A DNA stretch of 64,000 bases, taken from positions 124,001 to 188,000 of IMG/VR virus record IMGVR_UViG_3300017987_000001, one strand, 5' to 3'. Every line of letters starts with the position of its first letter. Positions within the stretch are counted from its first letter, which is position 1. Below are positions 3,628-36,685 of this stretch, one piece after another. Position numbers and translations under genes: made by a program. The notes under the pieces were generated by a model, which was not told the DNA's origin, did no database searches, and was given only the letters and a program-made list of their open reading frames with translations.

Positions 3628-5490
3628 CTAATACTTCGCCCCGGCCATCCCGTCGGGCTTAATCGGAGGCTTCCCGAACTCGGTCGTCTGCGCCAGCGAC
3701 GGAATGAACGATTCGCTGTGCTGCGCAGCTCCGAGGCCACGGTGCACCGATTGTAGCAGATTCTTTTTCAGATGGAAACCACCAAGTCGTACCATCCAAT
3801 CCTCGTTGTACCCCAGCGTCTCCATGGCGCGCACCATCTCCGGGGCGAACATCGGCTCGTCGGAGTGAGCCTTCACGGTCTTGAGTCCGCGCTTGTTGAT
3901 CTCAGCGGCAATGCGCGGCGTGATCTTCGTACCGATGGAGTACTGGAAGATCGGCTCCTCCAAGTACATGCCCACGGCACTCTTCGGTCGCATGGGCTTC
4001 GTACCCGTGCGCGGCTGATACTCGCGTGTGAGCGTGCTGAACTCTACCACATCATCGGGCAGCATGTCGGTGGTTCCGTCGGAGTCGACAATCCGTGCAT
4101 GGTTGATCAATCCGCGCGTCAGCAGCTCGATGTTCCGACGGTTCGCATCGATCTTGGTGGCCTTCAACGTGTTCCGGAAGTTGTTCATGAAGTGCCAGCG
4201 TCCGGCACCGATGCCCTTGTACTTCACAACCTCGGACGGGTTCGGCAAGCCTTCGCTCAATACGTCACCGGCCTCGATCTTGTCGCCGGGCACGACGGTC
4301 GGGTCGAACTCGGGCGCGACGTAGTGCTTCACGCCGCGCACGATAATGAAGTGACCGCCCTGCGGCGCTTTCTCGATGCCCTCGACAGTACCGTCGGTCT
4401 GCGCGATAGCCGCGCCGCCCATGAACGTACGTGGCACCTGAACGAGCTGGTTGATCGCATCGAAGCCGCCAGCGGTAGGACCAGCACCAACGACACCGCC
4501 GGTATGCTTCGAGGAGATAGCTGACTGCGTAATCGGCTCCGAGATAGCCTGTGCCGCTGCAACACCGACGTTGTCACCGATCTCGGGGAGCTTGCCCTTC
4601 TCGCGCACACCGACGCACCGGGCACACACACCATCGCGTGCCTGACACGTGAGCGGGCTGCGCACGATGATCTCTTTACCGTCACGCCCTATGCGCTTGG
4701 CTGCCTTCGTATCGATGATCGTATTCGCTTTGAAGCCCCCAGCGGGAGCTGCAAGGATCGAGCCAACGTTATCCGGGTCATCAGCGTCGACCGGGATGCC
4801 GTTGACCGTACCGCAATCATCCTCAGTGACGAGCAGCCGGTGAGATGCAAGCGCGAGCTGCTTGCCGAGAAAGCCGCCCTTCGGCGTGGCGAACTTGAGG
4901 TCGACCATGCCCTTTCGTGCCCCGTACGAGCCAGCCCAGTACTCGACTGGGTCCAGCCCCTCAGCGTACGAGTTGAGCAACGGGATCGGAACCGGGTTGC
5001 CTTTGTGGTCGGCCACGAGCAGGTCGCCGATGTTCGTCTGACTGAACTGAATCGGGTTGCCGCGTGCGCCGGAGTTGACCTGCATGGCGAGCGCGTTACG
5101 AAGGTCGAGCTGCTCTTGGAAGTTCAGTTTCCTAAGATCGTCGGCGCGCTTGCCGAGAAGTTTTATGACTCGCTCATTCTTTTGCTCATCGGTGAGCGGG
5201 GAGTTCAGAATCCTATTAACGCCACTACGTAGCTCGTCGCGAATCTTCTGTGCCTTCGGCCCTACAGTTAGAGAATCTAGGCTGATGGACGCCTCGCGGC
5301 CGTAGGTGGTAACCACCTCGGCCCCGAGGTCCATCATCTTCTTCGCGATCTCGTTGTACTGCTCCGGGTAGCGCTTCGCCACTTCGCGCAGGACCGTCTT
5401 GATCGTCTTCTTATTGATGGGACGATCGTAGTCCCGCATATCCGGCGGCAGGATGTCGTTGATCAGCAGTTGACCGACTGTAGTCTTCAC
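3628..5490 (-). CDS. rpoC: Multisubunit RNA polymerase beta' subunit, C-terminal half
   Basis: TTVGQ start, NSGARGN, bridge helix YGARKGMVD, EDDCGT, Zn site RSPLTC...CARC, trigger loop AAQAISEPITQ...KHTGG. Confidence 0.95.
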   Translation of the reverse strand: MKTTVGQLLINDILPPDMRDYDRPINKKTIKTVLREVAKRYPEQYNEIAKKMMDLGAEVVTTYGREASISLDSLTVGPKAQKIRDELRSGVNRILNSPLTDEQKNERVIKLLGKRADDLRKLNFQEQLDLRNALAMQVNSGARGNPIQFSQTNIGDLLVADHKGNPVPIPLLNSYAEGLDPVEYWAGSYGARKGMVDLKFATPKGGFLGKQLALASHRLLVTEDDCGTVNGIPVDADDPDNVGSILAAPAGGFKANTIIDTKAAKRIGRDGKEIIVRSPLTCQARDGVCARCVGVREKGKLPEIGDNVGVAAAQAISEPITQSAISSKHTGGVVGAGPTAGGFDAINQLVQVPRTFMGGAAIAQTDGTVEGIEKAPQGGHFIIVRGVKHYVAPEFDPTVVPGDKIEAGDVLSEGLPNPSEVVKYKGIGAGRWHFMNNFRNTLKATKIDANRRNIELLTRGLINHARIVDSDGTTDMLPDDVVEFSTLTREYQPRTGTKPMRPKSAVGMYLEEPIFQYSIGTKITPRIAAEINKRGLKTVKAHSDEPMFAPEMVRAMETLGYNEDWMVRLGGFHLKKNLLQSVHRGLGAAQHSESFIPSLAQTTEFGKPPIKPDGMAGAKY

Positions 5491-11426: not shown

Positions 11427-14400
11427 TCACTTCCCGAACTGCACGGAGTCGCCCACGCGCAGTTCACCCCTCTTGTAAGCGCGCAGGACGTCGGCCTTCG
11501 ACATGAAGGTCTTCACACGCTTGTCCTTGGCCGTCGATGCGAGGTACAGCCCGTGCAGGAACTCCTGCCTTGGGAAGTAGTGCACGTCGAAGTCGGATGC
11601 CGCGAGGAGGTTCCGACTCGGCATCATCTTGTCGACCGCTTCTTCCACCGCCGCCTTGCTCACCGGCACATGGAAATTCATAGCGTCACCGTCGAAGTCG
11701 GCGTTGAATCCCGGCGTCACGATGGGCGGAATCTGCAGCGTGTTGCCCTTGGTGATGATTGGCCACGCCGCCATCATGCCGTAACGGTGAAGCACCGGCG
11801 CGCGGTTGATGATGACCGGCCGACGACCAGTCTCTTCGAGCAGCGCCTTGTACGCCACCTGATCCTGATTCTCGATCGCCTTGGCCGCAGCCATCGCGCC
11901 CATGCCGCGCCGAACGAGGTTGCGCATCACGAACGGACGGTAAAGCACCCACGCCTTGCTCTCGGGGAGGCCGACCTGATCCATGCCAAGACTGGGGTTC
12001 GGCGTGATCACGCCTCGACCAACGGTGTCGACAGCCGCCCCGAGCACCTTCTGCTGATACATGCCCAGCTTCGGGCTCGATCCGAAGATGTGGCGCAGCA
12101 AACCGCCGACCTGCTTCTCCTGCGTCTTCGCAGCGACCGGATCACCGAGACCCGTGACCGCCTTGTATGCCTTGTAGAGCCGCAGGCGCTCGTCACCAAG
12201 CTCGTCGTCGCCGAGATCGTTGCGCAGCTCGCGCAGGTCGTCGTTGACGCTCATGAGATCCGCGTAGAGGTAGTTCGGATCATCCACGAACGTCGTCTTG
12301 TTGAAGGTGGTGATCGGGCGGAAGTTCGGAGGAAGCACCGGAACCTTCGTCAGCATGAGGTCGGACGGCTTCTGTCCCGCCTGCTTCAGCGTGCGCAGGT
12401 AGCCAAGTACCTTCACGGCGTTATCGCGCTTCGCGCCGGTCGCCTCGCGCACCTGCGAGGAGTAGTGCTCGATCGCGTCGTCGACTTTGATACGCTTGAG
12501 CGCGCTCAGGATCGCCTTCGACCCGCGCTCACCGTTCAAGTCGTCGCGTCCGGCAATGATCCGCTCCAGCTTGTTCTGCGTCAGCCCGAGCATGCGGCGA
12601 ATCGGCTCTTCCATCACAGGATTCGGGATAGGCTCAGCGAGGTCGATGTGAGACCAGCGCGTGCCACCATGGCCGCCGGTGAGGCCGACATCGAAGAGGC
12701 CGCCCTTCACCGGCTCCATGGCGTCTCCCGTGACCGTGTCGTTCTTCTTGATCGGTCCGGCGGACATCTTATCGATGTCCTTATCCGTCATGGCAAACAG
12801 ATGCAGCTGCTCGCCCTTCTTCTTGAGGTTGATCCCCGACGCCTGAAGCATGCTCAGGAACTTGTCGTAGATCATCGGAACCTTCGGGCTTGCAGGCGTG
12901 TACCCGAGTCGGAGCGCACGCCAGAAGTCGTCATTGCGCTGCCCGCGCACGAGCTTGGCGTCGCGGATGACATCGGTCGCACCGTGGCTGATGAGCGCCA
13001 TCATCTCGCCGACGCCGATACGCTTCGAGCCTTCTTGGCCGCCACCTGCGGGCATGCCCTCAGCCGTGTACGAGCCGATGTCGCGGCCGGAGAGCTTCGG
13101 CTCGGCCATGTGGTGAAGCTTCATCATGTACGTGTAGCCCGTGAAGACCTTCGGGATCTTCCGACCGCTCACCGGATCATGGATATCCTCGGTGTCGCTC
13201 ATCCCGTGCTTCTGCAGTTCCTTCTTCGCGAGCGTGACATAGCTCTCGTCCATGAAGCCCGGCAGCTTGTAGGGCACGCCGGTCTTCTTCGCGATCTTGC
13301 CCAACGCGGTCTCGATGAGCTGCGCCGGGTTGATACGGCTCACGATGCCGAGCGACGACAGCGTGATGTCGAACGGCTTGCCGTCCTTGTCGTGCGGCAT
13401 CTGATCGTCGGGGATGATCTTCGAGATGACGCCCTTGCCGCCGTAGCGATTGGAGAGCTTGTCGCCGACGTGCATTGGCGAGTACGCCTTCACGATGACC
13501 TTCCAGCCCTCCTTCGTCTTGTCGACATCCGTGACCACGCCTTCCGACTCGTGATCCCACGTCTCGGACGCGTCGCTGTAGAGCGTCTTGCGTGCGCGCA
13601 GCATTCCGCCGCCAGACGGCTTACGCTTGGAGATCGACAGCACCAGCGGATCACCGAACTTCACCTTCGTGCCGATCTTCACGACGCCATTGTCATCGAT
13701 CGTCGACATCTGCTGCTTGTCAAAGGTGCCCGGATAGATCGACATATACGACTTCTTGCCTGCCTCCTGATTGTCAGACTGCTGGTACTTCGTCGTGTAC
13801 ATGTGCTCGCTGGCGAGACGCTTCGCAGCTGACTCACTGAGTACGAGCGCGTCATCGGCGTTGTACCCACGATATGGCAGGTATGCGACCTTCAGGTTCA
13901 TTCCGGAGGCCACTGCCCCTGTGTCGTCGGTGAAGTTGCTTCGAGCGAGCAGCTGACCGGGAGCGACAGGATCTCCAACTCGTACGACAGGAGTGTTGTG
14001 GAGGTAGGTCTTCCGGTTGAAGGGGAAGTTGTTATAGAGATCGTAAGAGACCTTCTCTCCGTCGGCATAGCGCACGACGACCTTATCCTTAGTGATCTCA
14101 GCAACCGACCCCATACCCTCTGCACGAACCGCACCAGCCCGATCACCATAGATCTCCTCGAAGCTGCGTCCCGAACCATCATCGGCGAGGTTCTGAACGA
14201 GCGGAGCCTCGGCATTGCGAAGCGGCAGCGCCTGCGTCGCCATCTTCGCGCCCATGAGCAGACGGCCACCCTTGATCGCACTGACCATGGGGACCATGTT
14301 CGCCGTCGCCGTGAACATGTGGCTCGTGTGCGGCAGCTCGAAGTCGACATCCTTACGCTTCACGTACGCGAGCTTCTTGCCACGGATCATCGCTCGCACT

Positions 14401-16925
14401 TCTTTGCCCTTGCGCGCAAGCTCGCCGGGGAATGCGATGATGCTCTTGGCCATCTTGCTGGCGCTGATGCGGCGCGGCTTGCCGGTCTTCGCGTCGAGCA
14501 TGTCAACGTAGATGTTCCCGTCCGAACCCTTGTACGTCCGGTGCGTGATGCGGCTGTCAACACCAATCTTCATGCCTTCGGGCGCACGAATGGGGTCGAT
14601 CACGCCGAAGTGCGACGGCTGCACGGCACGCGCTTCGTCGGGAACAGCGTCGAGACCGGGCATTCCGCCCTCACCCATGCGGGTGACGCGCACGAGCTGG
14701 TCGAAGATCTCAAGCGGGTTCACCTCTTCGAGCGGAGCTGCGAGACCGCTCTTGAGCAGCACAAGTCGAAGCTGCGGCGAGAGCGCGCCCGCCGGGAACT
14801 TCGAGACGTTGCCCTTGTTGGTAGCACGCCACAGCAGCTTACGGGACATGCCGCCAGCGTCACGGGCGATACGCTCGGCGAAGAGATCCTCGGGGCCGAA
14901 CACGCGCTGAAATGCGAGCGAGTCGCGATCGTCCGTATCCGCCTTGCGCTGGTTGATGTCGATGAGCTTCTTCGTGACTTCGGCGATCACTTCGGGCGAC
15001 AGCTTGTCGATCTTGCGGCCAAGCGTCATCTCGGTCGTGTCGGGGTCAACTTCCATCTTCTCGAAGACACCACGCATCTGAAGACCCATGTCATCATCCG
15101 CGCGCTTCTCCATCGCTGCGTCACGCCCCACGAACTGCACGAACGCGCGCTTGATCTCGTCGACCGGCAGCATGGCCTTCAGCTCTTCGAGCGTGGTGAA
15201 GCGGCGCGGAAGCGTCTTCTCCTTCTTCACGGCTTTGAGCTGCTTCTCGACCTTCGCCTGATCGGCCGCCGGGTTGCCCTTGATGTCCTGATTGGCCTGC
15301 TGCTGACGCTCGATCAGCTGCATCGGCTCTTCGTTCTCCATCATCTCTTCGGCGGGCATCGACATGTCGACAACATCGGCGAGCTTCGTCGCCATCGCGC
15401 TCTTGACGAGCGTGTCGGAGATCGCTTCCTCAATCGCGTTCGTCACGGCAAGGAACGCGTTGGCCGTCTTCTCCTCGACGCCGTCGAACAGCGCTGCGAT
15501 CTTCGAAGCGCCACGCGGCTGCTTCTTGGGCTTCACGGCGACGGTGATGTGGAACTGGAACTCCTTGCCGCTGTCATCGCCGCGCGGAAGCTCCTCGAAT
15601 CCGAGCGACTTGCGATGAGCACGCAGCTCGGGCGACTTCGCTTCGAGGAACCATACGCGATCCATCTCATCCCAGCCCTCGGGGTCGAGATCGACGATGG
15701 CGTTCTGCAAACTGAAGGGGAACTTGCGGCCATTACCGCATGCGGTCTTCCACTTCTTGCCGTACTTCCCGATCAGCTGCTTCGCTTCCCAGTTGCGCAG
15801 AACGCTGATGTGCGGGAGATCGAAGCGCGACTCGCAGTCGACGTCCTGATCCTTCAGCGCCTGATACGCAGCCTCGGGCAGTCCCTTGTGGATCTTGAGG
15901 TACGCCCACGGCTTGTCCGAATCCGAATCGTCGCATACCAGCTCGCCGACGAACTTCGCGCGGCGGCGGTTACCTTCCTCGTCCTCCTGCGCAGCCTTGG
16001 CGAACTTGAACTCGCTGCCCACCCAGAGCATGCACCAGCCGGTCGGCGCGACGAAGCCCTGCACCCGGCGGCACGCGTTGACGCCGTTGAAGTTCTTGCA
16101 GCTGGAGCACTGCTGGAAGAATCCCGACATCGTGTAGTTCACGTCGCCCTTGGAGGTCTTGCCGTAGCCGACGTGCTCCTCGGAGTAGCCAAAGAACGCT
16201 GCCTTCTCGGTAGCGTCGGTGTCCTGCTGCTCGGGAGGGGTCTCCTCGGGCTTCTTCGAAACAAGCTTGTGATACGCGCGCTGAACGGCACGCGGGTCGG
16301 ACGCAGCAACGTTCGCCTGCAGCAGGTCCGGTCCCCACGTCTCGTTGAGCTTGCGGTCGTCGTAACCCATCGAGCGAAGGATCGGATAGAGCTTGAGGTT
16401 CGCCTGCCCGACGTTCATGCGGAAGACGCCGGTCTCCGGCTCCATGTAGACCCTGAAGCTGCGCCCCGTGCCACCCTTGACGTTAAAGTGGGCCTCGATG
16501 ATGCCGTTGTCCTTAACTCGACTGTAGATGCCGGGGCGCAGCCTCATTTGGGACGCTACGGTATACTCGTTGCCGTTGAAGACGAACGTACCACGATCGG
16601 TGAGATACGGAACCTGAGCGATGAGCCGTTGGTTAGTCTTGTCGACAATCTTGCCGGATGCGTTATCGACAAGTTCCCACCGACCAGCGAGCTTCCATCC
16701 GAGCGTCTGGCCGCGCATGATCGCCCGCTTCTGCTCGGAGTTGGTGTACTGCTTCGGCTTCACGTACTTCACGTCGTTCAGCCGCAGCGTGTAGCGCTGG
16801 TTCGTCATCGGGAAGCGCTCTTCGATCGCCTTCTGCACGTTCGTGAACAGAAGCTGGCGCGTCGAGCGCACGTCGTCGAACTCACGCATCGTAGGTTCGT
16901 TGGGAGCAGCGATTACGTCGGCCAT
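11427..16925 (-). CDS. rpoBC: Multisubunit RNA polymerase: beta fused to N-terminal half of beta', with a ~370 aa internal insertion
   Basis: beta motifs GTFVFNG, HFGVIDPIRAPEG, RLLMGAKM, GYNADD, GDKLSNRYGGKG, YMMKLHH. beta' motifs VPVLPPNFRP, NRAPVLH and catalytic NADFDGD. Confidence 0.97.
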   Translation of the reverse strand: MADVIAAPNEPTMREFDDVRSTRQLLFTNVQKAIEERFPMTNQRYTLRLNDVKYVKPKQYTNSEQKRAIMRGQTLGWKLAGRWELVDNASGKIVDKTNQRLIAQVPYLTDRGTFVFNGNEYTVASQMRLRPGIYSRVKDNGIIEAHFNVKGGTGRSFRVYMEPETGVFRMNVGQANLKLYPILRSMGYDDRKLNETWGPDLLQANVAASDPRAVQRAYHKLVSKKPEETPPEQQDTDATEKAAFFGYSEEHVGYGKTSKGDVNYTMSGFFQQCSSCKNFNGVNACRRVQGFVAPTGWCMLWVGSEFKFAKAAQEDEEGNRRRAKFVGELVCDDSDSDKPWAYLKIHKGLPEAAYQALKDQDVDCESRFDLPHISVLRNWEAKQLIGKYGKKWKTACGNGRKFPFSLQNAIVDLDPEGWDEMDRVWFLEAKSPELRAHRKSLGFEELPRGDDSGKEFQFHITVAVKPKKQPRGASKIAALFDGVEEKTANAFLAVTNAIEEAISDTLVKSAMATKLADVVDMSMPAEEMMENEEPMQLIERQQQANQDIKGNPAADQAKVEKQLKAVKKEKTLPRRFTTLEELKAMLPVDEIKRAFVQFVGRDAAMEKRADDDMGLQMRGVFEKMEVDPDTTEMTLGRKIDKLSPEVIAEVTKKLIDINQRKADTDDRDSLAFQRVFGPEDLFAERIARDAGGMSRKLLWRATNKGNVSKFPAGALSPQLRLVLLKSGLAAPLEEVNPLEIFDQLVRVTRMGEGGMPGLDAVPDEARAVQPSHFGVIDPIRAPEGMKIGVDSRITHRTYKGSDGNIYVDMLDAKTGKPRRISASKMAKSIIAFPGELARKGKEVRAMIRGKKLAYVKRKDVDFELPHTSHMFTATANMVPMVSAIKGGRLLMGAKMATQALPLRNAEAPLVQNLADDGSGRSFEEIYGDRAGAVRAEGMGSVAEITKDKVVVRYADGEKVSYDLYNNFPFNRKTYLHNTPVVRVGDPVAPGQLLARSNFTDDTGAVASGMNLKVAYLPYRGYNADDALVLSESAAKRLASEHMYTTKYQQSDNQEAGKKSYMSIYPGTFDKQQMSTIDDNGVVKIGTKVKFGDPLVLSISKRKPSGGGMLRARKTLYSDASETWDHESEGVVTDVDKTKEGWKVIVKAYSPMHVGDKLSNRYGGKGVISKIIPDDQMPHDKDGKPFDITLSSLGIVSRINPAQLIETALGKIAKKTGVPYKLPGFMDESYVTLAKKELQKHGMSDTEDIHDPVSGRKIPKVFTGYTYMMKLHHMAEPKLSGRDIGSYTAEGMPAGGGQEGSKRIGVGEMMALISHGATDVIRDAKLVRGQRNDDFWRALRLGYTPASPKVPMIYDKFLSMLQASGINLKKKGEQLHLFAMTDKDIDKMSAGPIKKNDTVTGDAMEPVKGGLFDVGLTGGHGGTRWSHIDLAEPIPNPVMEEPIRRMLGLTQNKLERIIAGRDDLNGERGSKAILSALKRIKVDDAIEHYSSQVREATGAKRDNAVKVLGYLRTLKQAGQKPSDLMLTKVPVLPPNFRPITTFNKTTFVDDPNYLYADLMSVNDDLRELRNDLGDDELGDERLRLYKAYKAVTGLGDPVAAKTQEKQVGGLLRHIFGSSPKLGMYQQKVLGAAVDTVGRGVITPNPSLGMDQVGLPESKAWVLYRPFVMRNLVRRGMGAMAAAKAIENQDQVAYKALLEETGRRPVIINRAPVLHRYGMMAAWPIITKGNTLQIPPIVTPGFNADFDGDAMNFHVPVSKAAVEEAVDKMMPSRNLLAASDFDVHYFPRQEFLHGLYLASTAKDKRVKTFMSKADVLRAYKRGELRVGDSVQFGK
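15520..15960 (-). other. 2H phosphoesterase-like domain inserted in RNAP beta
   Basis: Two H-x-[ST]-hydrophobic motifs: PHISVL (H372) and FHITVAV (H459), 87 aa apart. Confidence 0.75.
16023..16146 (-). other. HiPIP-like 4-Cys (putative Fe-S) domain inserted in RNAP beta
   Basis: CSSC-x8-C-x11-WC-x2-W (..PTGWCMLW) matches the HiPIP cysteine spacing. Confidence 0.65.
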
Positions 16926-18017: not shown

Positions 18018-18374
18018 TCAGAACCCTCTCTGCGGGTTGTACACATACAGATCGGCCCACCGCAGGAAGACACGCCAGTTCTTCGTCTCCGGATCGTACT
18101 CCCGGTCCTCAGCAGAGATGACTGCATGCCCGTTGGAGTACATCGTGTAGATGTCCGCCATGCGCTTGCGATCCTTCTCGTCACTCATATCGAGAATCTC
18201 GACGTGAGCACGCACGCCCTGCTTGGGCTGCATATGATCGGGATCGTCGTTCTTCAGGTCGGGCACATGGCCACGGAACGGGAGACCGTCCATGCCCGGA
18301 AGAATCGCGGGCATGTCGCGCTGCCCATTGGATGGATCGATCAGCTTGCCGTCGATATCCCAGCGATCAGCCAT
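18018..18374 (-). CDS. Hypothetical protein (118 aa)
   Basis: ORF track; tightly packed in the operon. Confidence 0.7.
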   Translation of the reverse strand: MADRWDIDGKLIDPSNGQRDMPAILPGMDGLPFRGHVPDLKNDDPDHMQPKQGVRAHVEILDMSDEKDRKRMADIYTMYSNGHAVISAEDREYDPETKNWRVFLRWADLYVYNPQRGF

Positions 18375-19831
18375 CAGATCTCCACCCCTCCTGCGGTCAT
18401 CGGAAGAATCTTGTTGTGCGCGTCGTCGGGCTGCGTCTCACCCTCTGCCTCGCGCTCCTGCGGCTGATTCTTCTTCGCACGGCGTTCAGCCTGCCGCGTG
18501 AGCCGCTTGTAGAGCGCCATGCGCTCAACGTGCCGCAGCTCTTCCGGATCAAGCGTAGGCTCCCGAGAGAGCGAGTATGCGGCGGTCGAAGCACCGGCAC
18601 CTAGGAGCGGAATGCCTGCAGTGGGGATGAGAAACGTGAGTATGGCGAGGTTCTTCGCCAATCCCCCTCCCTGCCGGATGATCTCCGCGAGTGCACTCGT
18701 TTGCGCCGCCTTCTCCAGCGCGCCATCGAGTTCGCTCGGCCGGATACCCGCCTCGGCGAACTTCTCGTAGAAGCCGTACTTGAACGCATTCTTCTTCAGC
18801 TTCTCGACGTCACGATCCTTGCGCTCCTTGTTCTCCGTGTGCTTCTTCGTTCCTTCGCCGACCGCCTCGATCTTCCCCTCGTCGACAGCGTCTTCCATAC
18901 CCTTTTCGAGATCGTCGAGTCGCGGCTCGTAGTAATCGTCTCCCTCTGTGAGGTGATCTTTCGCAATCTCCTGTGCCACTGCCGGATTGCTCGTGTGCTC
19001 AAGCTCTACTTCGGTGCCCTTCTCGATCTGAGCCTTCGGGAACATCGACGTGGGCATACCGGCGGCGAGTCCGCCGGGAATCACGTCGTCCTTGCCACCA
19101 ACGAGCTTGGCGAGGAGGCGATAGATCTCCTCCTCCGCCTCATGCTCGTCGACGCCGAGTGACTCTGCTTGCTGGTGGAAGCCCTCGTCGTCGATACCCT
19201 GTCCCATCTGCGTGATGTAGTTCACGAGCTGCTGTAGGATCTCGGGCGGCAGCGACTCTTCAGCCTCGTGCTCGGGCGATTCGATCTCGCCTTCCTCGTG
19301 CTCTTCGCTTTCATCCCCGTTGGCACTCTTCACGACGTACTCGACGAAGCTCTGCATCTTCGGCATGCCGCTGATGCCCTGCAGCGCCTGTGCGAGCGAC
19401 GGAGCTGGCTGCGACGGCCCATTGAGGCCAAGCAGATTGCTGGGCGCTTCGGGCGTGCCGGGAGCGGCCGGTCCCATAGCCGACGGGTTGCCGCCCTCTT
19501 CGACGACCTTCTCCTCAGGCGTGCGGTGAAGCCCGGGGTAGCGCAGCTCTTCGATCATGCGCCGCCGACGATCGGCCTTCTCGGCCTCGTTCTTCTGAGC
19601 AATAGCCTGCAGAAGCGGAGCTTTCTCCATAACCGTGCGGAAGTCCTGCCCCTTCAGCGCTTCGAGCGCGTCGATGCCGATGCCCTTCTGATCGAGCTTC
19701 CTCATGCGCTCGGTCATCGTAGGCGTGGGCATGCCGCTCATCGGCTGGACGCCGGGTAGCCCCGGCATACCTGCGCCGATGTTCGCCTGCTTGAGGTGAT
19801 TTTTGAACGCGTCCAACAATCTCTGGGGCAT
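18374..19831 (-). CDS. Acidic putative virion protein with DUF5661-like segment and C-terminal TM
   Basis: KGTEVELEHTSNPAVAQEIAKDHLTEGDDYY resembles DUF5661; KQAN, KSAN, KNAF, KAAQ motifs. Confidence 0.7.
   Translation of the reverse strand: MPQRLLDAFKNHLKQANIGAGMPGLPGVQPMSGMPTPTMTERMRKLDQKGIGIDALEALKGQDFRTVMEKAPLLQAIAQKNEAEKADRRRRMIEELRYPGLHRTPEEKVVEEGGNPSAMGPAAPGTPEAPSNLLGLNGPSQPAPSLAQALQGISGMPKMQSFVEYVVKSANGDESEEHEEGEIESPEHEAEESLPPEILQQLVNYITQMGQGIDDEGFHQQAESLGVDEHEAEEEIYRLLAKLVGGKDDVIPGGLAAGMPTSMFPKAQIEKGTEVELEHTSNPAVAQEIAKDHLTEGDDYYEPRLDDLEKGMEDAVDEGKIEAVGEGTKKHTENKERKDRDVEKLKKNAFKYGFYEKFAEAGIRPSELDGALEKAAQTSALAEIIRQGGGLAKNLAILTFLIPTAGIPLLGAGASTAAYSLSREPTLDPEELRHVERMALYKRLTRQAERRAKKNQPQEREAEGETQPDDAHNKILPMTAGGVEI
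19799..19820. promoter_or_regulatory. 22 bp palindrome copy 2 (ATTTTTGAACGCGTCCAACAAT)
   Basis: Consensus match; intragenic. Confidence 0.7.
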
Positions 19832-19842
19832 GGGGCTGCTCC

Positions 19843-21816
19843 CTATCGCATGAATGGGCTACCGGGGGACTGCGCTGCGGGCGCTCCCCGGAAGTAGCCC
19901 ATGATACTCGAAATCGTGTCGAGAATGTTGCCCGTATCTCGGATTGACTGCGGCTTCGTGCCGAGCAGCATACTCAGCAGATTCTCTCTGAGACCGAACG
20001 GCTTCGCGGGCGCCGGGCCGCCCATCCAATGCGGCTTCGCCGGAGAGCCGCCGCCCATCCACGCAGGCTTCTGTGGTCCGCCACCGCCGAGCAGCCCACC
20101 AAGGAACGCCTGCTTCAGCAGCCCAGCCGATTCGTGGACCTTGTCCCAATCGACCGAAGCTGCATGCTCGAAAATGGATTGTAGTATCGTGATCTTCCCG
20201 GTCTTGGGGTTCATGTAGATGTCCCCAGCCTCTGGGTTCTCTGGGTCAAGCGGTCCCAATCGAATCGAATCTTCTTCATCGTCATCAAAGCGATGCGCTC
20301 CTGCATCGACTGCGCGTTGATCTTCTTTCCACTGCTCTTCATCCTCGTCGGGTTCCTTCTTAGAGAATGGCCAGAGCGCTTCCTTCAACAGGATGCCTGC
20401 GTAGTCGGATGCTTTCCTCATGTCTGGATAGTCCTCGTGAATGGAGATCAGTCCGGGCGCGCGGTACGCCCCACTCGGGAACTGACCCTGTGCCTTGATC
20501 CGAGCAATCCGACCAAGGAACTCCTCCGGGTTCTTCAGCATTGCCCGCCGAAGATCCTCGGAGAATCCCGTTCCTACTTTACCAACTGCGGGGCCGTCAG
20601 GCGAGAGCGAATACTCGAAGCCGCCCGCTCCGACGCCCTCCAACCGCTTCTCGCCGGGGAAGATGTCCTTCACGAACACGTCGTGCTCGTCGTACAGCTT
20701 GACCTTCGCGGGCTTGCCGCCCTTCTTCGGCCACGCTACAATGCCCTCATGAGTAAGCGGATCACGCCCACCCTTGACATCCTCCCACAGAGCACGCTGT
20801 TCTTCCGGGGTCTCGGCCATTCGTGGGAGATGGAACTTGCCTTCAGGCAGATGCTTGAGGATTTCGCGGACCTTATCAAGGCGCTCGGCAATCGGGACGT
20901 CCATGCCGATGGGCTTCTTGCCGTACTTCAGGATATTGAAGATTGCATTGCGGAGCTGAACGCCCTGCTCGCGCTGCTTCTTCAGCGATTTGCGCGTCGA
21001 GGAGTTAAGAATCCCACCCAGTTCTTGGGGAGGGATGGCACGATCATCACGCGTACCGTAGAGTTCCCCACGGAGAATTGATCCCACGAGATGCTTGGGG
21101 ATGTTGAGGCCAGTAGTTCCTCCAACTCGGTAGGTGTGGACAATAGGTCGGCCAGTCGTTGTCGGCCGGTATGAGAGAACATCGATCTTATCCGAGAATA
21201 GCTTGTAGAGGGCTGCTGCTCCATCGATCTTCTCCATGTGGAGGTACTTCTCGTCGAAGAGCTTCTCCACGTCCTCGGCCGGAACCTTGGCGTACCGAAC
21301 CTTCTTGTGCTTGATGACCTCCGTGGGCGTCGTGTTGATCATCAGCCACGAGCCGCCCTGCGTCTTCTTCGTACGCGGCGAGCCGCCGGTGGGCGGTCCG
21401 CTCTTGCGTATCATCGTGTACATCTCTGGGTGCTTCTTGTGCGTGACCACGAAGTTGATCTTGTTCGGCTCGACCTTCGTGACCAGCACCGTGCCTTTGT
21501 CGTGCGTCTTCACCAGCCCCTTGCCGTAGCCCGACGTTATTTCGCCCTCGAAATTCGCGTAGGCTCCGGTGTGAAGCGGTTGTTGGAATGCTAAAACTTT
21601 CTGCCCCGACTCCTCGGGGAGTTTGCGTGATGCCCAACTGAGAAGTGATGGCTTGCCGCCTAGGTTTGGTCCGAACCGAATATCGTAGTGCGGCCCAGCT
21701 CGGTCAGCTAGGTGGCGCTGGATCACATACAGAAGCTCACGGCCCTTCGGGAGATCCGTAACGCTCCCGAAGCGCCGTGGGTCTGGTAGGCCCGGCGCGA
21801 ACTCAGTCTTGGCCAC
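19843..21816 (-). CDS. LigD-type 3'-phosphoesterase domain fused to ATP-dependent DNA ligase, plus KxA-bounded tail
   Basis: PE motifs IQRH...HYDIRF, H..YANFEG...GYGKG. Ligase motifs EKIDG, GELY, EGIV, KVK and OB-fold GKVGTGF. Confidence 0.88.
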   Translation of the reverse strand: MAKTEFAPGLPDPRRFGSVTDLPKGRELLYVIQRHLADRAGPHYDIRFGPNLGGKPSLLSWASRKLPEESGQKVLAFQQPLHTGAYANFEGEITSGYGKGLVKTHDKGTVLVTKVEPNKINFVVTHKKHPEMYTMIRKSGPPTGGSPRTKKTQGGSWLMINTTPTEVIKHKKVRYAKVPAEDVEKLFDEKYLHMEKIDGAAALYKLFSDKIDVLSYRPTTTGRPIVHTYRVGGTTGLNIPKHLVGSILRGELYGTRDDRAIPPQELGGILNSSTRKSLKKQREQGVQLRNAIFNILKYGKKPIGMDVPIAERLDKVREILKHLPEGKFHLPRMAETPEEQRALWEDVKGGRDPLTHEGIVAWPKKGGKPAKVKLYDEHDVFVKDIFPGEKRLEGVGAGGFEYSLSPDGPAVGKVGTGFSEDLRRAMLKNPEEFLGRIARIKAQGQFPSGAYRAPGLISIHEDYPDMRKASDYAGILLKEALWPFSKKEPDEDEEQWKEDQRAVDAGAHRFDDDEEDSIRLGPLDPENPEAGDIYMNPKTGKITILQSIFEHAASVDWDKVHESAGLLKQAFLGGLLGGGGPQKPAWMGGGSPAKPHWMGGPAPAKPFGLRENLLSMLLGTKPQSIRDTGNILDTISSIMGYFRGAPAAQSPGSPFMR

Positions 21817-21842: not shown

Positions 21843-22412
21843 TTATAGACGAGTGCCGCGAATCAGGCAATATACATCGCGGTTCTTGTCGACGTGGTCG
21901 ATGTCGCTCCAGATGGGGTTGCCTATCCCGAGATCGGACAGGAATGACTCCTCTCGGGCCACGGACTCCTTGTTCATCGTGACGATCGTACCTCCGACAG
22001 CCGTCACGCGCGCCAGCTCTCGTGAGACGGTCTCCCGGTCCTTCGCCGCATTGATGCTCTGCATCGTCATGATGTCGACCACGAGATCGAACGTGCCGTC
22101 GTCGAAGGGCAGCTGGAATGTGTTCAGCGTGACGGGCGTCACGGTCTTGCGGTTGTTGGCCGCTCTGCCCACCCAATCGCCGAAGAGATCCGCTGCCCAC
22201 ACGTGCCCGCACTTCGATGCGATCTGCTGCGTGAACCGCCCGTAGCCACAACCGAAGTCGAGACCGTGCGTGTAGAAGCCCGTGAGCACCTTCGTCAGCT
22301 CGGCCCCAATGATGGTGCCCTGCCGCACGTGATCCTCACCCACGTGGCCCACGCACTTGTCGCCGAAGCGCTTCTTGCGATCGGTCCAGTATTTCAGCGT
22401 GTCGGAGAACAT
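21843..22412 (-). CDS. Class I SAM-dependent methyltransferase
   Basis: GLDFGCGYG motif I; FDLVV motif. Confidence 0.85.
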   Translation of the reverse strand: MFSDTLKYWTDRKKRFGDKCVGHVGEDHVRQGTIIGAELTKVLTGFYTHGLDFGCGYGRFTQQIASKCGHVWAADLFGDWVGRAANNRKTVTPVTLNTFQLPFDDGTFDLVVDIMTMQSINAAKDRETVSRELARVTAVGGTIVTMNKESVAREESFLSDLGIGNPIWSDIDHVDKNRDVYCLIRGTRL

Positions 22413-22413
22413 G

Positions 22414-23343
22414 TTAGTCCTCGGAGATCGTAGGATATACGTACCACTGAATGGTCTTGTGCAGCCCTTCGAGCAACTTCATCTTCGGCTCGAACTTGAG
22501 TGCTTCGCGCATCTTCGTCACGTCGAGCACCTTGCGCGCCGCGCCGTTGGGCTTCTCCGTATCCCAGACGACCTCGCCCTTGTATCCGGTCAGCTTGACG
22601 ATCTTCTCCGTCAGTTCCTTGACCGTCGTGCCGATACCGGTGCCGATGTTGATCGTACCCATCGCCAGCTTCTCGTAGGCGAGGAAGATGGCATCGGCAG
22701 CGTCGTCGACGTACATGAACTCACGGATCGGGCTTCCATCTCCCCAGCACTTCACACTGGGCTTGTCCTCCTGTACGGCTTCAATGAAGCGCGCGATGAG
22801 CGCACCGACGACATGCGAGCGGTAGATCGTGAAGTCGTCGTGCGGGCCGTAGAGATTCGTGAGGATGGCCTGCCCGCCCATGATGCCGTGCTGCTTGCGA
22901 TACTGCCGCTGGCAGACCAGATGGATGCGCTTGGTCATGCCATAACCCTCGACGGACTCATGGCACGGCCCAGCTTCGAGATTCTCCTCGACGAGGTCTT
23001 CCCCCACGTCGCCCGGGTAGGCGCACGCTGAGCCGACAGAGAAGACCTTCTTGATCTTCATGCGCGCGGCAGCCTCCCACACGTTCAGCGCCATGATCGA
23101 GTTGATGTGGAACATATCGGCAGGCTGGTACATGTTGATGCCGATGCCGCCGTAATAGGCTGCCGAGTGAAGGATACCGTCGACGTGCTCGTGCCGCTGC
23201 AGGTAGCGGCAGACACTGTTGAGGTCCATCAGATCCATCTCGGTCGAACGCGGCGCAAGAACCTCGATGTGCTTCTCCTGTCTGAAGCGACGCACGAGCT
23301 TCTGTCCCAGAAAGCCTGACCCGCCAGTGATCAGAATAACCAT
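22414..23343 (-). CDS. fcl: GDP-L-fucose synthase-like epimerase/reductase (extended SDR)
   Basis: TGGSGFLG, SACAYP, YGMTK, NLYGPHD, WGDGSPIREFMYVDD, KPNGAARKVLD. Confidence 0.85.
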   Translation of the reverse strand: MVILITGGSGFLGQKLVRRFRQEKHIEVLAPRSTEMDLMDLNSVCRYLQRHEHVDGILHSAAYYGGIGINMYQPADMFHINSIMALNVWEAAARMKIKKVFSVGSACAYPGDVGEDLVEENLEAGPCHESVEGYGMTKRIHLVCQRQYRKQHGIMGGQAILTNLYGPHDDFTIYRSHVVGALIARFIEAVQEDKPSVKCWGDGSPIREFMYVDDAADAIFLAYEKLAMGTINIGTGIGTTVKELTEKIVKLTGYKGEVVWDTEKPNGAARKVLDVTKMREALKFEPKMKLLEGLHKTIQWYVYPTISED

Positions 23344-23987
23344 CAGTTCCTCCTCGTGAAGATCGCATCACCCCAGAAGTCGGGGGTCGACCCCGGCTGG
23401 AAGTGACGCAGTGTGAATCCCTGCTCGTTCATGTACTTCTCGATCTCGGGCAGCAGCTTCGTGCCTTTGTACAGCGGCTTGAGCCACGCCTCACAGATGA
23501 CCAGCTTGCAGTTCTCCAGCGTCTTGAGCGCTCCAAGCAGCACCTCGTAGTCGTGTCCCTGCACGTCCGTGACCATGACGTCGATAGGCGGCAAATTCAG
23601 CATGTCGATCGCCACTACTGCCACAGGGATCGTCGTATGGGTGCGTATCGACCGAAATCGCTTCTTCGCTATGTCCTTGTCCAGCGGGTGAAGCGACGAG
23701 CATTCGAGCGGGACCGTCGAGTACCACGGCCGAACGCCTGCCCGATCCGACACGATCTTCTGCAGGCATACGACATCCGGGTACTTCTCGCCGATCACCT
23801 CGGCGTTCGACGAGTCGCCCTCGACGCACACGATCTTCGCGTTCCACTGACGGTACGCTTCGATCTCCTGCCCGATACCAGCGCCTACGTGAAGAATCGT
23901 AGGTTCGTCTTCCGGCTGGATCTCTGCCAGCCGCATCCCGATGTCGATCAACGCTGGCACAACTTCCCTTCGATCAGATAGTGCCAT
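23343..23987 (-). CDS. FkbM-family methyltransferase
   Basis: LHVGAGIG, VCVEG, DVMVTDVQGHDYEVLLG, WGDAIF; start uncertain. Confidence 0.85.
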   Translation of the reverse strand: MALSDRREVVPALIDIGMRLAEIQPEDEPTILHVGAGIGQEIEAYRQWNAKIVCVEGDSSNAEVIGEKYPDVVCLQKIVSDRAGVRPWYSTVPLECSSLHPLDKDIAKKRFRSIRTHTTIPVAVVAIDMLNLPPIDVMVTDVQGHDYEVLLGALKTLENCKLVICEAWLKPLYKGTKLLPEIEKYMNEQGFTLRHFQPGSTPDFWGDAIFTRRN

Positions 23988-24736
23988 CCGAAGAGCCTTT
24001 CGAGTGCACGGAACAGGTGATGAGGCATCCACCGCCATGGCAATGCCTGCCTGTACTCGTGCCGGACGTACTCCGGGATGCTCCACGAGAAGATATGTTC
24101 CTTGCGTGCGCTCGTCAGCTCGAAGTGCGGTTCGAGCAGCTTGCGTACCCCGCGCTTCGTGTAGGTGTACGCTACAGGAACGCCGGGCTGGGCCTCGCAC
24201 GTTACGCTGCTGATGAGCATCTGCAGCGACTTGATCGAGTACTTGGCGTACAGCATGAGCTTCAGCACGGTGTCAGGACCGGCGAAGTTCGCCAGCTCCT
24301 GCATCGCACGATCCGGACTCGGCGTGTGGTGAATCACTCCGAACGAGTAGATGAGATCGTACGGATACGGATCGACGGTCCGGCTCAGCTCCTCGCAGTT
24401 CGCCTGCTTGAGCACCACACGATCCTCAAGACCGTACGCCTTCACGCGCTTCTCGGTGAGTTTCAGGCTCTCCGTGGAGAGATCGACGGCAGTCACGTAT
24501 GCACCGGCTCGCGCGAAGCTGACGGTGTCAGTGCCAATGCCGCAGCCGATCTCCAGTACGTAGCGATCCTTCCATCTCGGGAATTCGGCGAACGTGGGAA
24601 TGTGCGGCTCGACGAAGTACTTGCGCTTCTCGACCTGATCGAAGTACTCACGCGTCCCGACGGGGGCCGTGCCGTGTCGGATGTTGCACGGGCGCGCGTC
24701 CCAGAACTTCTGGACCTCCTCGATGGTTGCGGTCAT
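23948..24736 (-). CDS. Class I SAM-dependent methyltransferase
   Basis: Start MTATIEE (ATGA overlap); VLEIGCGIGTD, YDLIYSFGVIHH. Confidence 0.88.
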   Translation of the reverse strand: MTATIEEVQKFWDARPCNIRHGTAPVGTREYFDQVEKRKYFVEPHIPTFAEFPRWKDRYVLEIGCGIGTDTVSFARAGAYVTAVDLSTESLKLTEKRVKAYGLEDRVVLKQANCEELSRTVDPYPYDLIYSFGVIHHTPSPDRAMQELANFAGPDTVLKLMLYAKYSIKSLQMLISSVTCEAQPGVPVAYTYTKRGVRKLLEPHFELTSARKEHIFSWSIPEYVRHEYRQALPWRWMPHHLFRALERLFGWHYLIEGKLCQR

Positions 24737-26419: not shown

Positions 26420-26422
26420 GAC

Positions 26423-27073
26423 TCACCGCTTCAGAAGGTAGTTCTCGCCGTCGTAGACCTCGGGGTCAGAATAGCCACGTGCGGCCAACCACTTCAGCGC
26501 ATCCTCGGCACTCTGGCCCCGCTTCCCCAACGCATGATTCAGCTCGACCATGACGTAGGGATTGAGATGCTCCAGTGTCGACTCGGCGCCCTGCAGCACC
26601 TCAAAGTCATATGAATCCACATCGATCTTGATTGCATCAACGTGATGGAGATTCTCGCGATCAATGAAGTCGTCGATCGTGACGAACGTATACTCTTGGA
26701 ACTCGGGCGCCTGTCCCCAGACCTTGAAGATGCCATCCTCGATCTTGCCGCTCTTCGCACCCATCGCGCAGCGCCAGCAGTCGACATTGTCGCCGCACTG
26801 ATCCTTCGTCTGATTGTGCTTCACGTTCTCCATGAGCATAGCGAACGTCTCGGTCGGCTCGATGGCCAGCACGTGACCCTTCGGTGCGAGCTGGGAGAAG
26901 AGGAGCGTGTAGTAGCCGATGTTCGCACCCACATCGATGATGGTCCAGTCTTCCTTCACGTGCTGGACGAACCACTTCTTCGTCTGCATCTCGCAGTTCG
27001 GGTAATAGTTCGCGAACTGTGGATAGAATGCGATCAGCTCGATGGGGTCTCTGCCGGGAATGTTCGTGTGCAT
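26423..27073 (-). CDS. FkbM-family methyltransferase
   Basis: Start MHTNIP (TAATG overlap); IIDVGANIGYY, AIEP, IKIDVDSYDFEVLQG. Confidence 0.9.
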   Translation of the reverse strand: MHTNIPGRDPIELIAFYPQFANYYPNCEMQTKKWFVQHVKEDWTIIDVGANIGYYTLLFSQLAPKGHVLAIEPTETFAMLMENVKHNQTKDQCGDNVDCWRCAMGAKSGKIEDGIFKVWGQAPEFQEYTFVTIDDFIDRENLHHVDAIKIDVDSYDFEVLQGAESTLEHLNPYVMVELNHALGKRGQSAEDALKWLAARGYSDPEVYDGENYLLKR

Positions 27074-32297: not shown

Positions 32298-32298
32298 G

Positions 32299-36677: not shown

Positions 36678-36685
36678 GCCGACCT

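What the first reader, a model, noticed from the sequence alone, without database searches (positions are those of the whole stretch)
16023..16146. HiPIP-like Fe-S mini-domain inside a viral RNA polymerase
Seen: CSSCKNFNGVNACRRVQGFVAPTGWCMLW. Established: C-x2-C...C...GWC is the cluster-binding pattern of high-potential iron-sulfur proteins, which are normally exported electron carriers. Inference: here it could be a redox sensor, an Fe-S cargo or a repurposed Zn/Fe knuckle. It is bounded by EKAA and AKAA.
Basis: partly seen in the sequence, partly recalled or inferred. Interest (0 to 1): 0.7.

Follow-up and report, generated by a model that had tools for sequence, protein, structure and literature searches.

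The report
HiPIP iron-sulfur domain in phage RNA polymerase
A jumbo phage's own RNA polymerase carries, inside an extra insertion, a 50-residue domain that belongs to the high-potential iron-sulfur protein (HiPIP) family, which is normally an exported bacterial electron carrier. If it binds its cluster, this would be an iron-sulfur cofactor on a bacterial-type RNA polymerase, which the papers I searched do not describe.

Summary
The peptide is real. It lies on the minus strand at residues 273-301 (window 16023-16109) of an 1832-aa ORF (11427..16925). That ORF is a fused RNAP beta plus N-terminal beta' in a complete 207,857-bp phage record.

The HiPIP reading holds up:
- The window's own 50 aa hit the minimal HiPIP PioC (PDB 6xyv) at E=1.1e-4, with the same C-x2-C-x8-C-x12-C spacing.
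- A profile of the module from 17 homologues finds only HiPIPs in the PDB.
- A wider profile reaches PioC at 6.9e-15.
- 70 of 83 relatives match Pfam HiPIP. The window's own segment is sub-threshold (10.3 bits against a cut-off of 22).
- The AF2 model (pLDDT 91.9) matches only HiPIP structures (TM 0.79).
- All four Cys and the shielding Tyr, Phe and Trp are invariant in 17/17 homologues; the second Trp (W301) is in at least 90%.
- The rest of the polymerase core has no cysteine at all.

The module has no Tat leader. It sits in a ~415-residue insertion in the beta lobe, directly followed by a 2H phosphoesterase domain.

Cluster binding is inferred, not shown, and the function is unknown. My best guess is an air-stable [4Fe-4S] module whose folding depends on the cluster, acting structurally or as a regulator. 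I found no paper describing this. It is a new variant of a known kind.

The parts
11427..16925 (-). 1832-aa ORF. It is an RNAP beta subunit fused to the N-terminal part of beta', and it ends shortly after the NADFDGD catalytic motif.
   Evidence: Translation. Pfam Rpb2_6 6e-58, Rpb2_3, Rpb1_1, Rpb1_2. It is the only multisubunit RNAP set in the genome found with PF00562 and PF00623.
15006..16253 (-). Lineage-specific insertion of about 415 residues (225-640) in the beta lobe (beta2). Order: variable linker, HiPIP module, short conserved linker, 2H domain, long acidic/helical variable linker.
   Evidence: Residues 1-226 align to bacterial beta ~34-234, and residue 642 aligns to E. coli beta 420. 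The Vibrio phage D181 homologue has only about 35 residues here. The linkers vary in length among homologues.
16014..16163 (-). HiPIP (PioC-type) domain, residues 255-304.
   Evidence: PioC E=1.1e-4. Profile hits in the PDB are HiPIPs only. AF2 pLDDT 91.9. Foldseek gives 18/18 HiPIPs, TMq 0.79.
16107..16109 (-). Cys273, predicted cluster ligand 1.
   Evidence: Invariant in 17/17 RNAP homologues and in 83/83 family members. Aligns with the first Cys of the PioC C-x2-C-x8-C-x12-C motif.
16098..16100 (-). Cys276, predicted cluster ligand 2.
   Evidence: Invariant.
16071..16073 (-). Cys285, predicted cluster ligand 3.
   Evidence: Invariant.
16032..16034 (-). Cys298, predicted cluster ligand 4. 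It is preceded by Gly296-Trp297.
   Evidence: Invariant. Trp at Cys4-1 is a HiPIP hallmark (PMC7462912).
16134..16136 (-). Tyr264 of the invariant V-N-Y motif. It is the counterpart of the conserved HiPIP tyrosine upstream of Cys1.
   Evidence: Invariant in 83/83. Aligns with the Tyr of PioC.
16023..16037 (-). W297-C298-M-L-W301: Trp at Cys4-1 and an aromatic residue at Cys4+3, the hydrophobic shield of the cluster.
   Evidence: W297 is invariant and W301 is at least 90% conserved. The rule comes from PMC7462912.
15516..15938 (-). 2H phosphoesterase-like domain, residues ~330-470. Its two H-x-S/T motifs are at H372 (15801-15812) and H459 (15540-15551).
   Evidence: Pfam 2H-SAK PF22547 E=1.4e-3, sub-threshold. 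The same family is precomputed on 7 of the 17 homologues. Both His are invariant. AF2 pLDDT is about 65-93 over this stretch. Top Foldseek hits are Usb1, CPDase, poxvirus cGAMP PDE, Acb1 and LigT. Stand-alone relatives exist.
3628..5490 (-). Separate ORF (620 aa) that encodes the C-terminal part of beta'.
   Evidence: Pfam Rpb1_5 7.6e-23 and Rpb1_4.

Best explanation
Residues ~255-304 of the phage RNAP beta/beta' fusion are a true member of the HiPIP fold family, of the minimal PioC type. The module was captured once by this phage RNAP lineage. Its nearest relatives in the tree are small HiPIP-like proteins without a leader, some of them phage-encoded.

The module is now part of a ~415-residue insertion in the beta lobe. 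It is joined through a short conserved linker to a 2H phosphoesterase domain and tethered to the polymerase by variable, partly low-complexity linkers.

I propose that C273, C276, C285 and C298 bind one [4Fe-4S] cluster, shielded by Y264, F279, W297 and W301. A HiPIP of this size has almost no secondary structure and folds around the cubane. The domain would therefore fold only when the host's Fe-S assembly machinery loads it. The HiPIP shield would keep the cluster stable in air.

The module has no Tat leader and sits in the reducing cytoplasm. The cluster would rest in the 2+ state, so the module cannot be a periplasmic electron shuttle. The most likely role is a structural or regulatory module that depends on the cluster. 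It would organise or gate the lobe insertion and its tethered 2H enzyme, coupling the phage polymerase to host iron and oxidant status.

Shown: family membership by sequence, predicted fold, conservation, position in the enzyme, absence of a leader. Inferred: cluster binding. Speculative: the regulatory consequence.
For: Homology to HiPIP:
- The single sequence hits PioC at E=1.1e-4.
- The profile of 17 RNAP modules hits only HiPIPs in the PDB; PioC aligns ungapped with identical Cys spacing.
- The wider profile reaches PioC at 6.9e-15, 3h31 at 1.6e-8 and 1isu at 3.5e-6.
- 946 proteins match at E<=1e-3 among 1.84 billion representatives. Most are 50-130 aa, and about a third have RR leaders.
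- 70/83 of these match Pfam HiPIP, best 8.7e-8.

Fold: AF2 pLDDT 91.9. All 18 Foldseek PDB matches are HiPIPs; TMq 0.79, rmsd 1.9 A to PioC.

Constraint on the residues:
- The four Cys, Y264, F279, G296 and W297 are invariant in 17/17. W301 is at least 90% conserved.
- The aromatic rule at Cys4-1 and Cys4+3 is met.
- The RNAP core outside the insertion has 0 Cys in 1416 residues, with about 18 expected. The same holds for the intein-free homologues, where every Cys but one lies in the HiPIP-2H insertion.

Position: beta lobe. The insertion is absent from the Vibrio phage homologue.

Single capture: the RNAP modules form one clade, support 0.89, next to leaderless small proteins.

Precedent for enzymatic add-ons to phage RNAP beta: the HD domain in Bacillus jumbo phages (PMC7824862).
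Against: - No metal or cofactor data exist. The attempt to model the 4Fe-4S ligand was not folded by the tool and gives no evidence.
- The window's own segment is below Pfam's HiPIP cut-off (10.3 against 22 bits).
- With RNAP-only sequences AF2 left the module unfolded (pLDDT 30-43). The confident model therefore rests on an alignment that includes genuine HiPIPs.
- I know of no HiPIP with a documented non-electron-transfer or intracellular structural role. The proposed mechanism has no direct precedent.
- In one homologue (P0002) about 190 residues separate the HiPIP from the 2H domain. This weakens the idea of a tight HiPIP-2H unit.
Confidence: 0.5

Rival explanations
1. It is a redox switch or electron-transfer site. 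The HiPIP cluster cycles between 2+ and 3+ in response to oxidants, or exchanges charge with DNA near the downstream channel. This changes polymerase activity or promoter use, or activates the neighbouring 2H enzyme. The module would then be a true sensor rather than a passive structural cofactor.
For: The HiPIP fold is built for the 3+/2+ couple at positive potential (PMC7462912). The module sits in the beta lobe, which borders the DNA cleft; the position is, the location of the lobe from general RNAP structural knowledge. The module is basic, with invariant K259 and near-invariant K256. Fe-S proteins that control transcription through RNAP-bound factors are known, for example WhiB1 on sigma A (PMC6954389).
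Against: Nothing here bears on redox cycling. At cytoplasmic potential a HiPIP stays in the 2+ state unless strongly oxidised. The long flexible linkers make a fixed position near DNA uncertain. 2H phosphoesterases need no redox partner.
Confidence: 0.2
2. It is a repurposed metal knuckle or docking module. The HiPIP scaffold has lost the cluster. It binds Zn or a single Fe, or it serves only as a compact protein-protein or packaging tag. HiPIP-like modules are also fused to capsid-associated phage proteins.
For: Modules of the same family are fused to a head-maturation protease (P0036, two copies), a portal protein (P0055), an ADP-ribosyltransferase (P0153) and a NUDIX enzyme (P0057). The RNAP and the ORFs around it are cysteine-poor. 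Five RNAP homologues carry a second Cys-rich 'zinc- or iron-chelating' CxxCxxCC domain in the same insertion.
Against: No Zn-finger family is supported by homology; only sporadic single hits appear, against 70/83 for HiPIP. The Cys spacing and the cluster-shielding Tyr, Phe and Trp residues are kept exactly as in cluster-binding HiPIPs. A site holding a single small ion would not require this.
Confidence: 0.2
3. It is a chance cysteine pattern or a neutral remnant with no function.
For: The loose four-Cys pattern is frequent in six-frame translations of this GC-rich DNA, 34 occurrences. The direct Pfam score is sub-threshold.
Against: There are 17 invariant columns across homologues down to 46% identity over the module. 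These are the only cysteines kept in an otherwise Cys-free polymerase. The sequence and fold matches to HiPIPs are significant.
Confidence: 0.03

Closest known systems
PioC of Rhodopseudomonas palustris TIE-1 (PDB 6xyv), the smallest known HiPIP, and HiPIPs in general (Pfam PF01355)
   Same: Identical C-x2-C-x8-C-x12-C spacing. Tyr upstream of Cys1, Gly-Trp before Cys4 and an aromatic residue at Cys4+3. Domain length of about 50 residues. Predicted fold TM 0.79.
   Different: There is no Tat leader. It is not a free periplasmic electron carrier but an internal domain of a cytoplasmic 1832-aa enzyme. The direct Pfam score is below the cut-off. Cluster binding and potential are unknown.
[4Fe-4S] domain of archaeal RNAP subunit D/Rpo3 (from my own knowledge; not tested here)
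   Same: An Fe-S cluster on a multisubunit RNAP that is not part of catalysis. It is thought to act in assembly or as an oxidant-sensitive structural element.
   Different: A different subunit (the alpha-like D, not beta). A different, ferredoxin-like cluster domain. Oxygen-labile rather than HiPIP-shielded. Archaeal, not phage or bacterial-type.
Lineage-specific insertions of bacterial RNAP beta, such as E. coli beta SI1 in the beta2 lobe (from my own knowledge; position mapped)
   Same: An extra module inserted in the lobe between the conserved N-terminal beta segment and the region that aligns to E. coli beta ~420.
   Different: To my knowledge bacterial inserts are built of other repeat folds and carry no cofactor or enzyme domain. 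This one holds a HiPIP and a 2H phosphoesterase.
HD phosphohydrolase fused to the RNAP beta cognate of Bacillus jumbo phages (PMC7824862)
   Same: A phage multisubunit RNAP that has gained a phosphohydrolase-type enzyme domain.
   Different: A C-terminal fusion in phiKZ/AR9-type split polymerases. An HD fold, not 2H. No Fe-S module.
WhiB-like [4Fe-4S] proteins bound to sigma A (PMC6954389)
   Same: A small Fe-S protein attached to the transcription machinery that makes it respond to redox or NO.
   Different: A separate protein with an unrelated fold and an oxygen/NO-labile cluster. It binds sigma, not beta.

Membership tests
HiPIP (PF01355) | Four cysteine ligands in the order C-x2-C ... C ... 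C with HiPIP spacing | tested here: met
   C273-x2-C276-x8-C285-x12-C298. The spacing is identical to PioC and the alignment is ungapped.
HiPIP (PF01355) | Trp at Cys4-1 and an aromatic residue at Cys4+2/+3 that shield the cluster | tested here: met
   W297 is invariant and W301 is at least 90% conserved. The rule is quoted from PMC7462912.
HiPIP (PF01355) | Conserved Tyr N-terminal to Cys1 | tested here: met
   Y264 is invariant in 83/83 aligned family members and aligns with the Tyr of PioC. That this Tyr is a family hallmark is from my own knowledge.
HiPIP (PF01355) | Significant sequence similarity to proven HiPIPs | tested here: met
   phmmer of the 50 aa against the PDB gives PioC at 1.1e-4. 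Profile A3 gives PioC 6.9e-15, 3h31 1.6e-8, 1isu 3.5e-6 and 1hlq 4.4e-4.
HiPIP (PF01355) | Score above Pfam's gathering cut-off (22 bits) | tested here: not met
   The window's segment scores 10.3 bits, E 0.9, and there was no hit in the whole-protein scan. 70/83 relatives match at E<=1, best 8.7e-8. This is an operational threshold, not a biological feature.
HiPIP (PF01355) | HiPIP three-dimensional fold | tested here: met
   The AF2 model (pLDDT 91.9) gave 18 Foldseek matches, all HiPIPs, with TMq up to 0.80. Caveat: this is a prediction, the alignment included genuine HiPIPs, and the RNAP-only alignment gave pLDDT 30-43.
HiPIP (PF01355) | Tat leader, periplasmic soluble electron carrier | tested here: not met
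   The domain is internal at residues 255-304 of a cytoplasmic polymerase. It is therefore a HiPIP-fold domain, not a classical HiPIP electron shuttle.
HiPIP (PF01355) | Binds a [4Fe-4S] cluster that cycles 3+/2+ at positive potential | not testable with these tools
   The ligand co-folding job was not run by the tool. This needs spectroscopy and metal analysis.
2H phosphoesterase superfamily (2H-SAK, PF22547) | Two H-x-T/S motifs | tested here: met
   H372-I-S and H459-I-T. Both His are invariant in 16/16.
2H phosphoesterase superfamily (2H-SAK, PF22547) | Pfam gathering cut-off (27 bits) | tested here: not met
   19.4 bits, E 1.4e-3 for the window's protein. The family is recorded on 7 of the 17 homologues and on stand-alone relatives.
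2H phosphoesterase superfamily (2H-SAK, PF22547) | 2H fold | tested here: met
   pLDDT is about 65-93 over this stretch of the model. The top Foldseek matches are Usb1, CPDase, cGAMP PDE, Acb1 and LigT. E-values are modest (>=2.8e-3) because 100 disordered residues were included in the model.
Multisubunit RNAP beta/beta' | Beta and beta' catalytic domains, including NADFDGD | tested here: met
   Pfam Rpb2_6 6e-58 and Rpb1_2 3e-25. NADFDGD is present in the translation.

The most novel reading that the evidence does not exclude
The HiPIP domain holds an air-stable [4Fe-4S] cluster that makes a bacterial-type phage RNA polymerase, or its tethered 2H phosphoesterase, respond to host iron or oxidant status. 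To my knowledge this would be the first Fe-S-dependent beta-subunit RNAP. It would also be one visible member of a wider, unrecognised class of cytoplasmic phage HiPIPs that are attached to portal, prohead protease, ADP-ribosyltransferase and NUDIX proteins or encoded as ~55-aa stand-alone genes.
Probability: 0.25. Interest if true: 0.85.

Novelty: new variant of a known kind. Interest (0 to 1): 0.66.

Why it matters
HiPIPs are described as exported photosynthetic and respiratory electron carriers. Finding the fold as an internal, strongly conserved domain of a cytoplasmic phage RNA polymerase extends what the fold is used for.

I found no report of an Fe-S cofactor on a bacterial-type RNAP. 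If confirmed, it would give a simple way to test whether a phage links its transcription to host iron-sulfur supply or oxidative stress.

The same searches show that leaderless HiPIP-like modules recur in phage proteins and are annotated as 'hypothetical'. The finding therefore points to a family-level gap in annotation, not a single oddity.

The adjoining 2H phosphoesterase is of separate interest. Enzymes of this fold include phage and viral proteins that destroy cyclic-nucleotide immune signals (Acb1, poxvirus cGAMP PDE among the matches), as well as RNA-end repair enzymes.

Tried and rejected
- Reading the stated interval on the + strand gives an unrelated peptide. The feature is on the minus strand.
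- The direct Pfam scan of the whole protein and of a 90-aa piece gave no HiPIP hit even at E<=10. On the 50-aa piece it gave only 10.3 bits. The weak NRDD (Zn site) hit, E 0.011-0.024, appeared in only 4/83 members, so I rejected it.
- Megablast of the gene against 50,697 phage records found nothing. tblastn of the module against the same records found nothing. Only distant RNAP homologues without the insertion turned up: Vibrio phages D181/D148/D69 and Salmonella phage Arash.
- Complex prediction with a 4Fe-4S ligand was counted but not folded, so it gives no evidence either way.
- The search for related loci failed with the broad alignment. With the RNAP-only alignment it found one further IMG/VR locus.
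- I looked for a stand-alone HiPIP-2H two-domain protein that could be the source of the insertion. Only 2H proteins without a HiPIP were found.
- I checked for flanking DNA repeats or a meaningful EKAA/AKAA boundary. Only chance-level matches appeared.
- No second HiPIP module and no second RNAP set were found in the genome with these profiles.
I could not measure the Cys S-S distances that would separate cubane geometry from Zn geometry.
- Literature searches for HiPIP or Fe-S in phage RNAPs found nothing relevant.
Full report
**1. The observation**

On the + strand the interval 16023-16146 translates to an unrelated peptide. The quoted peptide is on the minus strand, inside ORF 11427..16925 (1832 aa). 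The 29-residue motif is residues 273-301, window 16023-16109.

The ORF is a viral RNA polymerase gene. Pfam finds Rpb2_6 (6e-58), Rpb2_3, Rpb1_1 and Rpb1_2, and the protein ends about 70 residues after NADFDGD. It is therefore a beta subunit fused to the N-terminal part of beta'. The C-terminal part of beta' is a separate ORF at 3628..5490.

The window is bases 124001-188000 of a 207,857-bp virus record with direct terminal repeats, rated complete. PF00562 and PF00623 find only this one multisubunit RNAP set in the genome.

**2. Is it more than chance?**

- The loose four-Cys pattern occurs 34 times in the six frames of this 60% GC window. With G-[WY]-C before the last Cys it occurs once.
- A search restricted to residues 225-520 found 16 homologous RNAP proteins from metagenomes, 50-78% identical over that region.
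- All of them carry C-x2-C-x8-C-x12-C.
- In the 50-residue module there are 17 invariant columns. These include the four Cys, V-N-Y, F279, N283, V-Q-G and G-W before Cys4.
- The linkers on either side vary in length and sequence.
- The whole ORF has only seven cysteines. Four are these and three are in the next domain.
- The remaining 1416 residues have none. About 18 are expected from the 1.29% Cys content of the other long ORFs in the window, Poisson P~1e-8.
- In all intein-free homologues every Cys but one lies in the HiPIP-2H insertion, so the polymerase core is Cys-free there too.

**3. Is it a HiPIP?**

There was no hit in the first scan and 10.3 bits, E 0.9, against a cut-off of 22 on the 50-aa piece. 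The other routes agree with each other.

*Sequence*
- The 50 aa alone hit PioC (PDB 6xyv), the smallest known HiPIP, at E=1.1e-4 over residues 3-49.
- A profile of the 17 RNAP modules finds four PDB sequences at E<=10, and all four are HiPIPs. PioC aligns without gaps and with identical Cys spacing.
- The same profile, run against 1.84 billion representative proteins, finds 946 proteins at E<=1e-3.
- Most of these are 50-130 residues long. About a third have twin-arginine-like leaders and about a third are 75 aa or shorter.
- Of 83 aligned members, 70 match Pfam HiPIP, best 8.7e-8. No zinc-finger family collects more than two.
- The broadened profile hits PioC at 6.9e-15 over its full length, and four more HiPIPs at E<0.05.

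*Fold*
- With that alignment AF2 gives pLDDT 91.9.
- All 18 Foldseek matches in the PDB are HiPIPs. TMq is 0.79 to 1isu and PioC, with rmsd 1.9 A to PioC.
- Caveat: with RNAP-only sequences AF2 left this stretch at pLDDT 30-43. The fold evidence therefore leans on the family alignment.

*Hallmark residues*
- The PioC paper names Trp at Cys4-1 and an aromatic residue at Cys4+2/+3 as HiPIP hallmarks (PMC7462912). These are W297 and W301 here.
- The Tyr upstream of Cys1 (Y264) is invariant across all 83 sequences.

*What is not HiPIP-like*
- There is no Tat leader.
- The domain is internal to a cytoplasmic enzyme.

**4. Where it sits**

- Residues 1-226 align to bacterial beta ~34-234.
- Residue 642 onward aligns to E. 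coli beta from residue 420.
- Against Thermus beta, residues 78-198 align to 93-212 and residues 664-792 to 322-453.
- The stretch between these anchors is therefore several hundred residues longer than in Thermus beta. It lies in the beta2 lobe, near the place of the E. coli SI1 insert (my own knowledge).
- The distant homologue in Vibrio phage D181 has only about 35 residues at this point and no Cys module.
- The insertion (~225-640) reads: variable linker, HiPIP (255-304), a short conserved linker, a 2H phosphoesterase-like domain (~330-470), then a long acidic/helical variable linker.

Evidence for the 2H domain:
- Two invariant H-x-S/T motifs, at H372 and H459.
- Pfam 2H-SAK at E 1.4e-3, sub-threshold for the window but recorded on 7 of the 17 homologues.
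- pLDDT about 65-93.
- Top structural matches are all 2H enzymes: Usb1, CPDase, penguinpox cGAMP PDE, phage Acb1 and LigT.
- Stand-alone 2H-SAK relatives exist without a HiPIP. The two modules were therefore joined in this lineage.

A FastTree of the modules puts all RNAP copies in one clade (support 0.89) next to leaderless small proteins. This suggests a single capture. The alignment is only about 50 columns, so the result is weak.

**5. How it most likely works**

*Shown:* family membership, predicted fold, strict conservation of the ligands and shield, location in the lobe insertion, no export signal.

*Inferred:* the four Cys hold a [4Fe-4S] cubane. The unchanged Cys spacing and the retained aromatic shield are what a cubane requires and what a single Zn ion would not. 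I put this at about 0.7.

*Proposed mechanism:*
- A 50-residue HiPIP folds around its cluster. The domain would then be folded only when host ISC/SUF machinery has loaded it.
- HiPIP shielding would keep the cluster intact in air.
- In the cytoplasm the cluster would rest as 2+.
- My best-supported reading is a structural or regulatory module that depends on the cluster. It would organise the lobe insertion and the tethered 2H enzyme, tying the phage polymerase to iron and oxidant status (confidence 0.5 for the package).

*Rivals:*
- A true redox or DNA-charge switch (0.2).
- A scaffold that has lost the cluster and serves as a metal knuckle or docking/packaging tag (0.2).
- Chance (0.03).

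The co-folding test with a 4Fe-4S ligand was not executed by the tool and says nothing.

**6. Comparison with what is known**

- Closest family: HiPIP, specifically PioC.
- Closest functional analogues: the [4Fe-4S] domain of archaeal RNAP subunit D (my own knowledge; different subunit and fold) and WhiB-type Fe-S proteins on sigma A (PMC6954389).
- Closest architectural precedents: bacterial beta lobe insertions, and the HD phosphohydrolase fused to the beta cognate of Bacillus jumbo phages (PMC7824862).
- Full-text searches for HiPIP or Fe-S together with phage RNAP returned nothing relevant.
- The jumbo-phage review does not mention HiPIP or iron-sulfur at all.

**7. Wider pattern**

- Modules of the same family occur fused to a phage head-maturation protease (DUF2213, two copies), a portal protein, an ADP-ribosyltransferase and a NUDIX enzyme.
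- They also occur as leaderless ~55-aa genes on phage-like contigs.
- Among 50,697 deposited phage records, tblastn with two of these proteins found only one phage, entered under two accessions: Synechococcus phage S-SRM01. Its 67-aa protein is annotated 'hypothetical' and has the same Cys spacing and G-W-C.

**8. Verdict**

Cluster binding and function need bench work. Novelty: a new variant of a known kind, that is, a known fold in a new, cytoplasmic, polymerase-embedded context. Interest 0.66.

Noticed in passing
window 15516-15938 (-), residues ~330-470 of the RNAP ORF: A 2H phosphoesterase-like domain with two invariant H-x-S/T motifs lies directly after the HiPIP module inside the RNAP beta lobe insertion. 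Its structural neighbours include Usb1, CPDase, poxvirus cGAMP PDE and phage Acb1. An RNA-end-processing or immune-signal-degrading enzyme tethered to a phage RNAP deserves its own study.
   Followed up: partly
window 11427-16925 (-): Outside the insertion the polymerase has no cysteine at all: 0 in 1416 residues, with about 18 expected. The same holds in intein-free homologues. The usual beta' zinc-binding cysteines are therefore absent.
   Followed up: partly
window 1-21423 compared with 21843-40076: The long ORFs around the RNAP (1-21.4 kb) are cysteine-poor (0-0.97%, several with none). The next block (21.8-40 kb) runs mostly at 1.4-2.8%. I have no explanation; it may reflect proteins exposed to oxidising conditions or packaged in the virion.
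   Followed up: no
window 11427-16925 (-) and 3628-5490 (-): Unusual gene split: beta is fused to the N-terminal part of beta', up to just past NADFDGD. The C-terminal part of beta' (Rpb1_4/Rpb1_5) is a separate ORF about 6 kb downstream. Five ORFs without Pfam matches lie between them.
   Followed up: partly
homologues P0002-P0017: RNAP homologues carry further add-ons: inteins (LAGLIDADG/Intein_splicing) in seven, an N-terminal GNAT acetyltransferase in P0002 and P0012, and a Cys-rich CxxCxxCC 'zinc- or iron-chelating' domain (about 20 bits, cut-off 23) after the 2H domain in P0013-P0017.
   Followed up: partly
P0036, P0055, P0153, P0057; L010 8001-8174; L012 2465-2668: HiPIP-like modules are fused to a phage head-maturation protease (two copies), a portal protein, an ADP-ribosyltransferase and a NUDIX hydrolase. 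They also occur as leaderless ~55-aa genes on phage-like contigs and in Synechococcus phage S-SRM01 (QPX48026.1, 'hypothetical protein').
   Followed up: partly
window 19843-21816 (-) and 18374-19831 (-): Upstream of the RNAP lie a LigD_N 3'-phosphoesterase plus ATP-dependent-ligase-like protein and a DUF5661 protein. The same order is kept on a related 210,759-bp contig. DUF5661 is fused to a 2H-SAK domain in P0172, which hints at a shared nucleic-acid end-repair function.
   Followed up: no
window 22414-32396 (-): A block of sugar-nucleotide and methyltransferase genes: nucleotide-sugar epimerase, methyltransferase and UDP-glucose dehydrogenase. They may serve DNA or surface glycan modification.
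   Followed up: no
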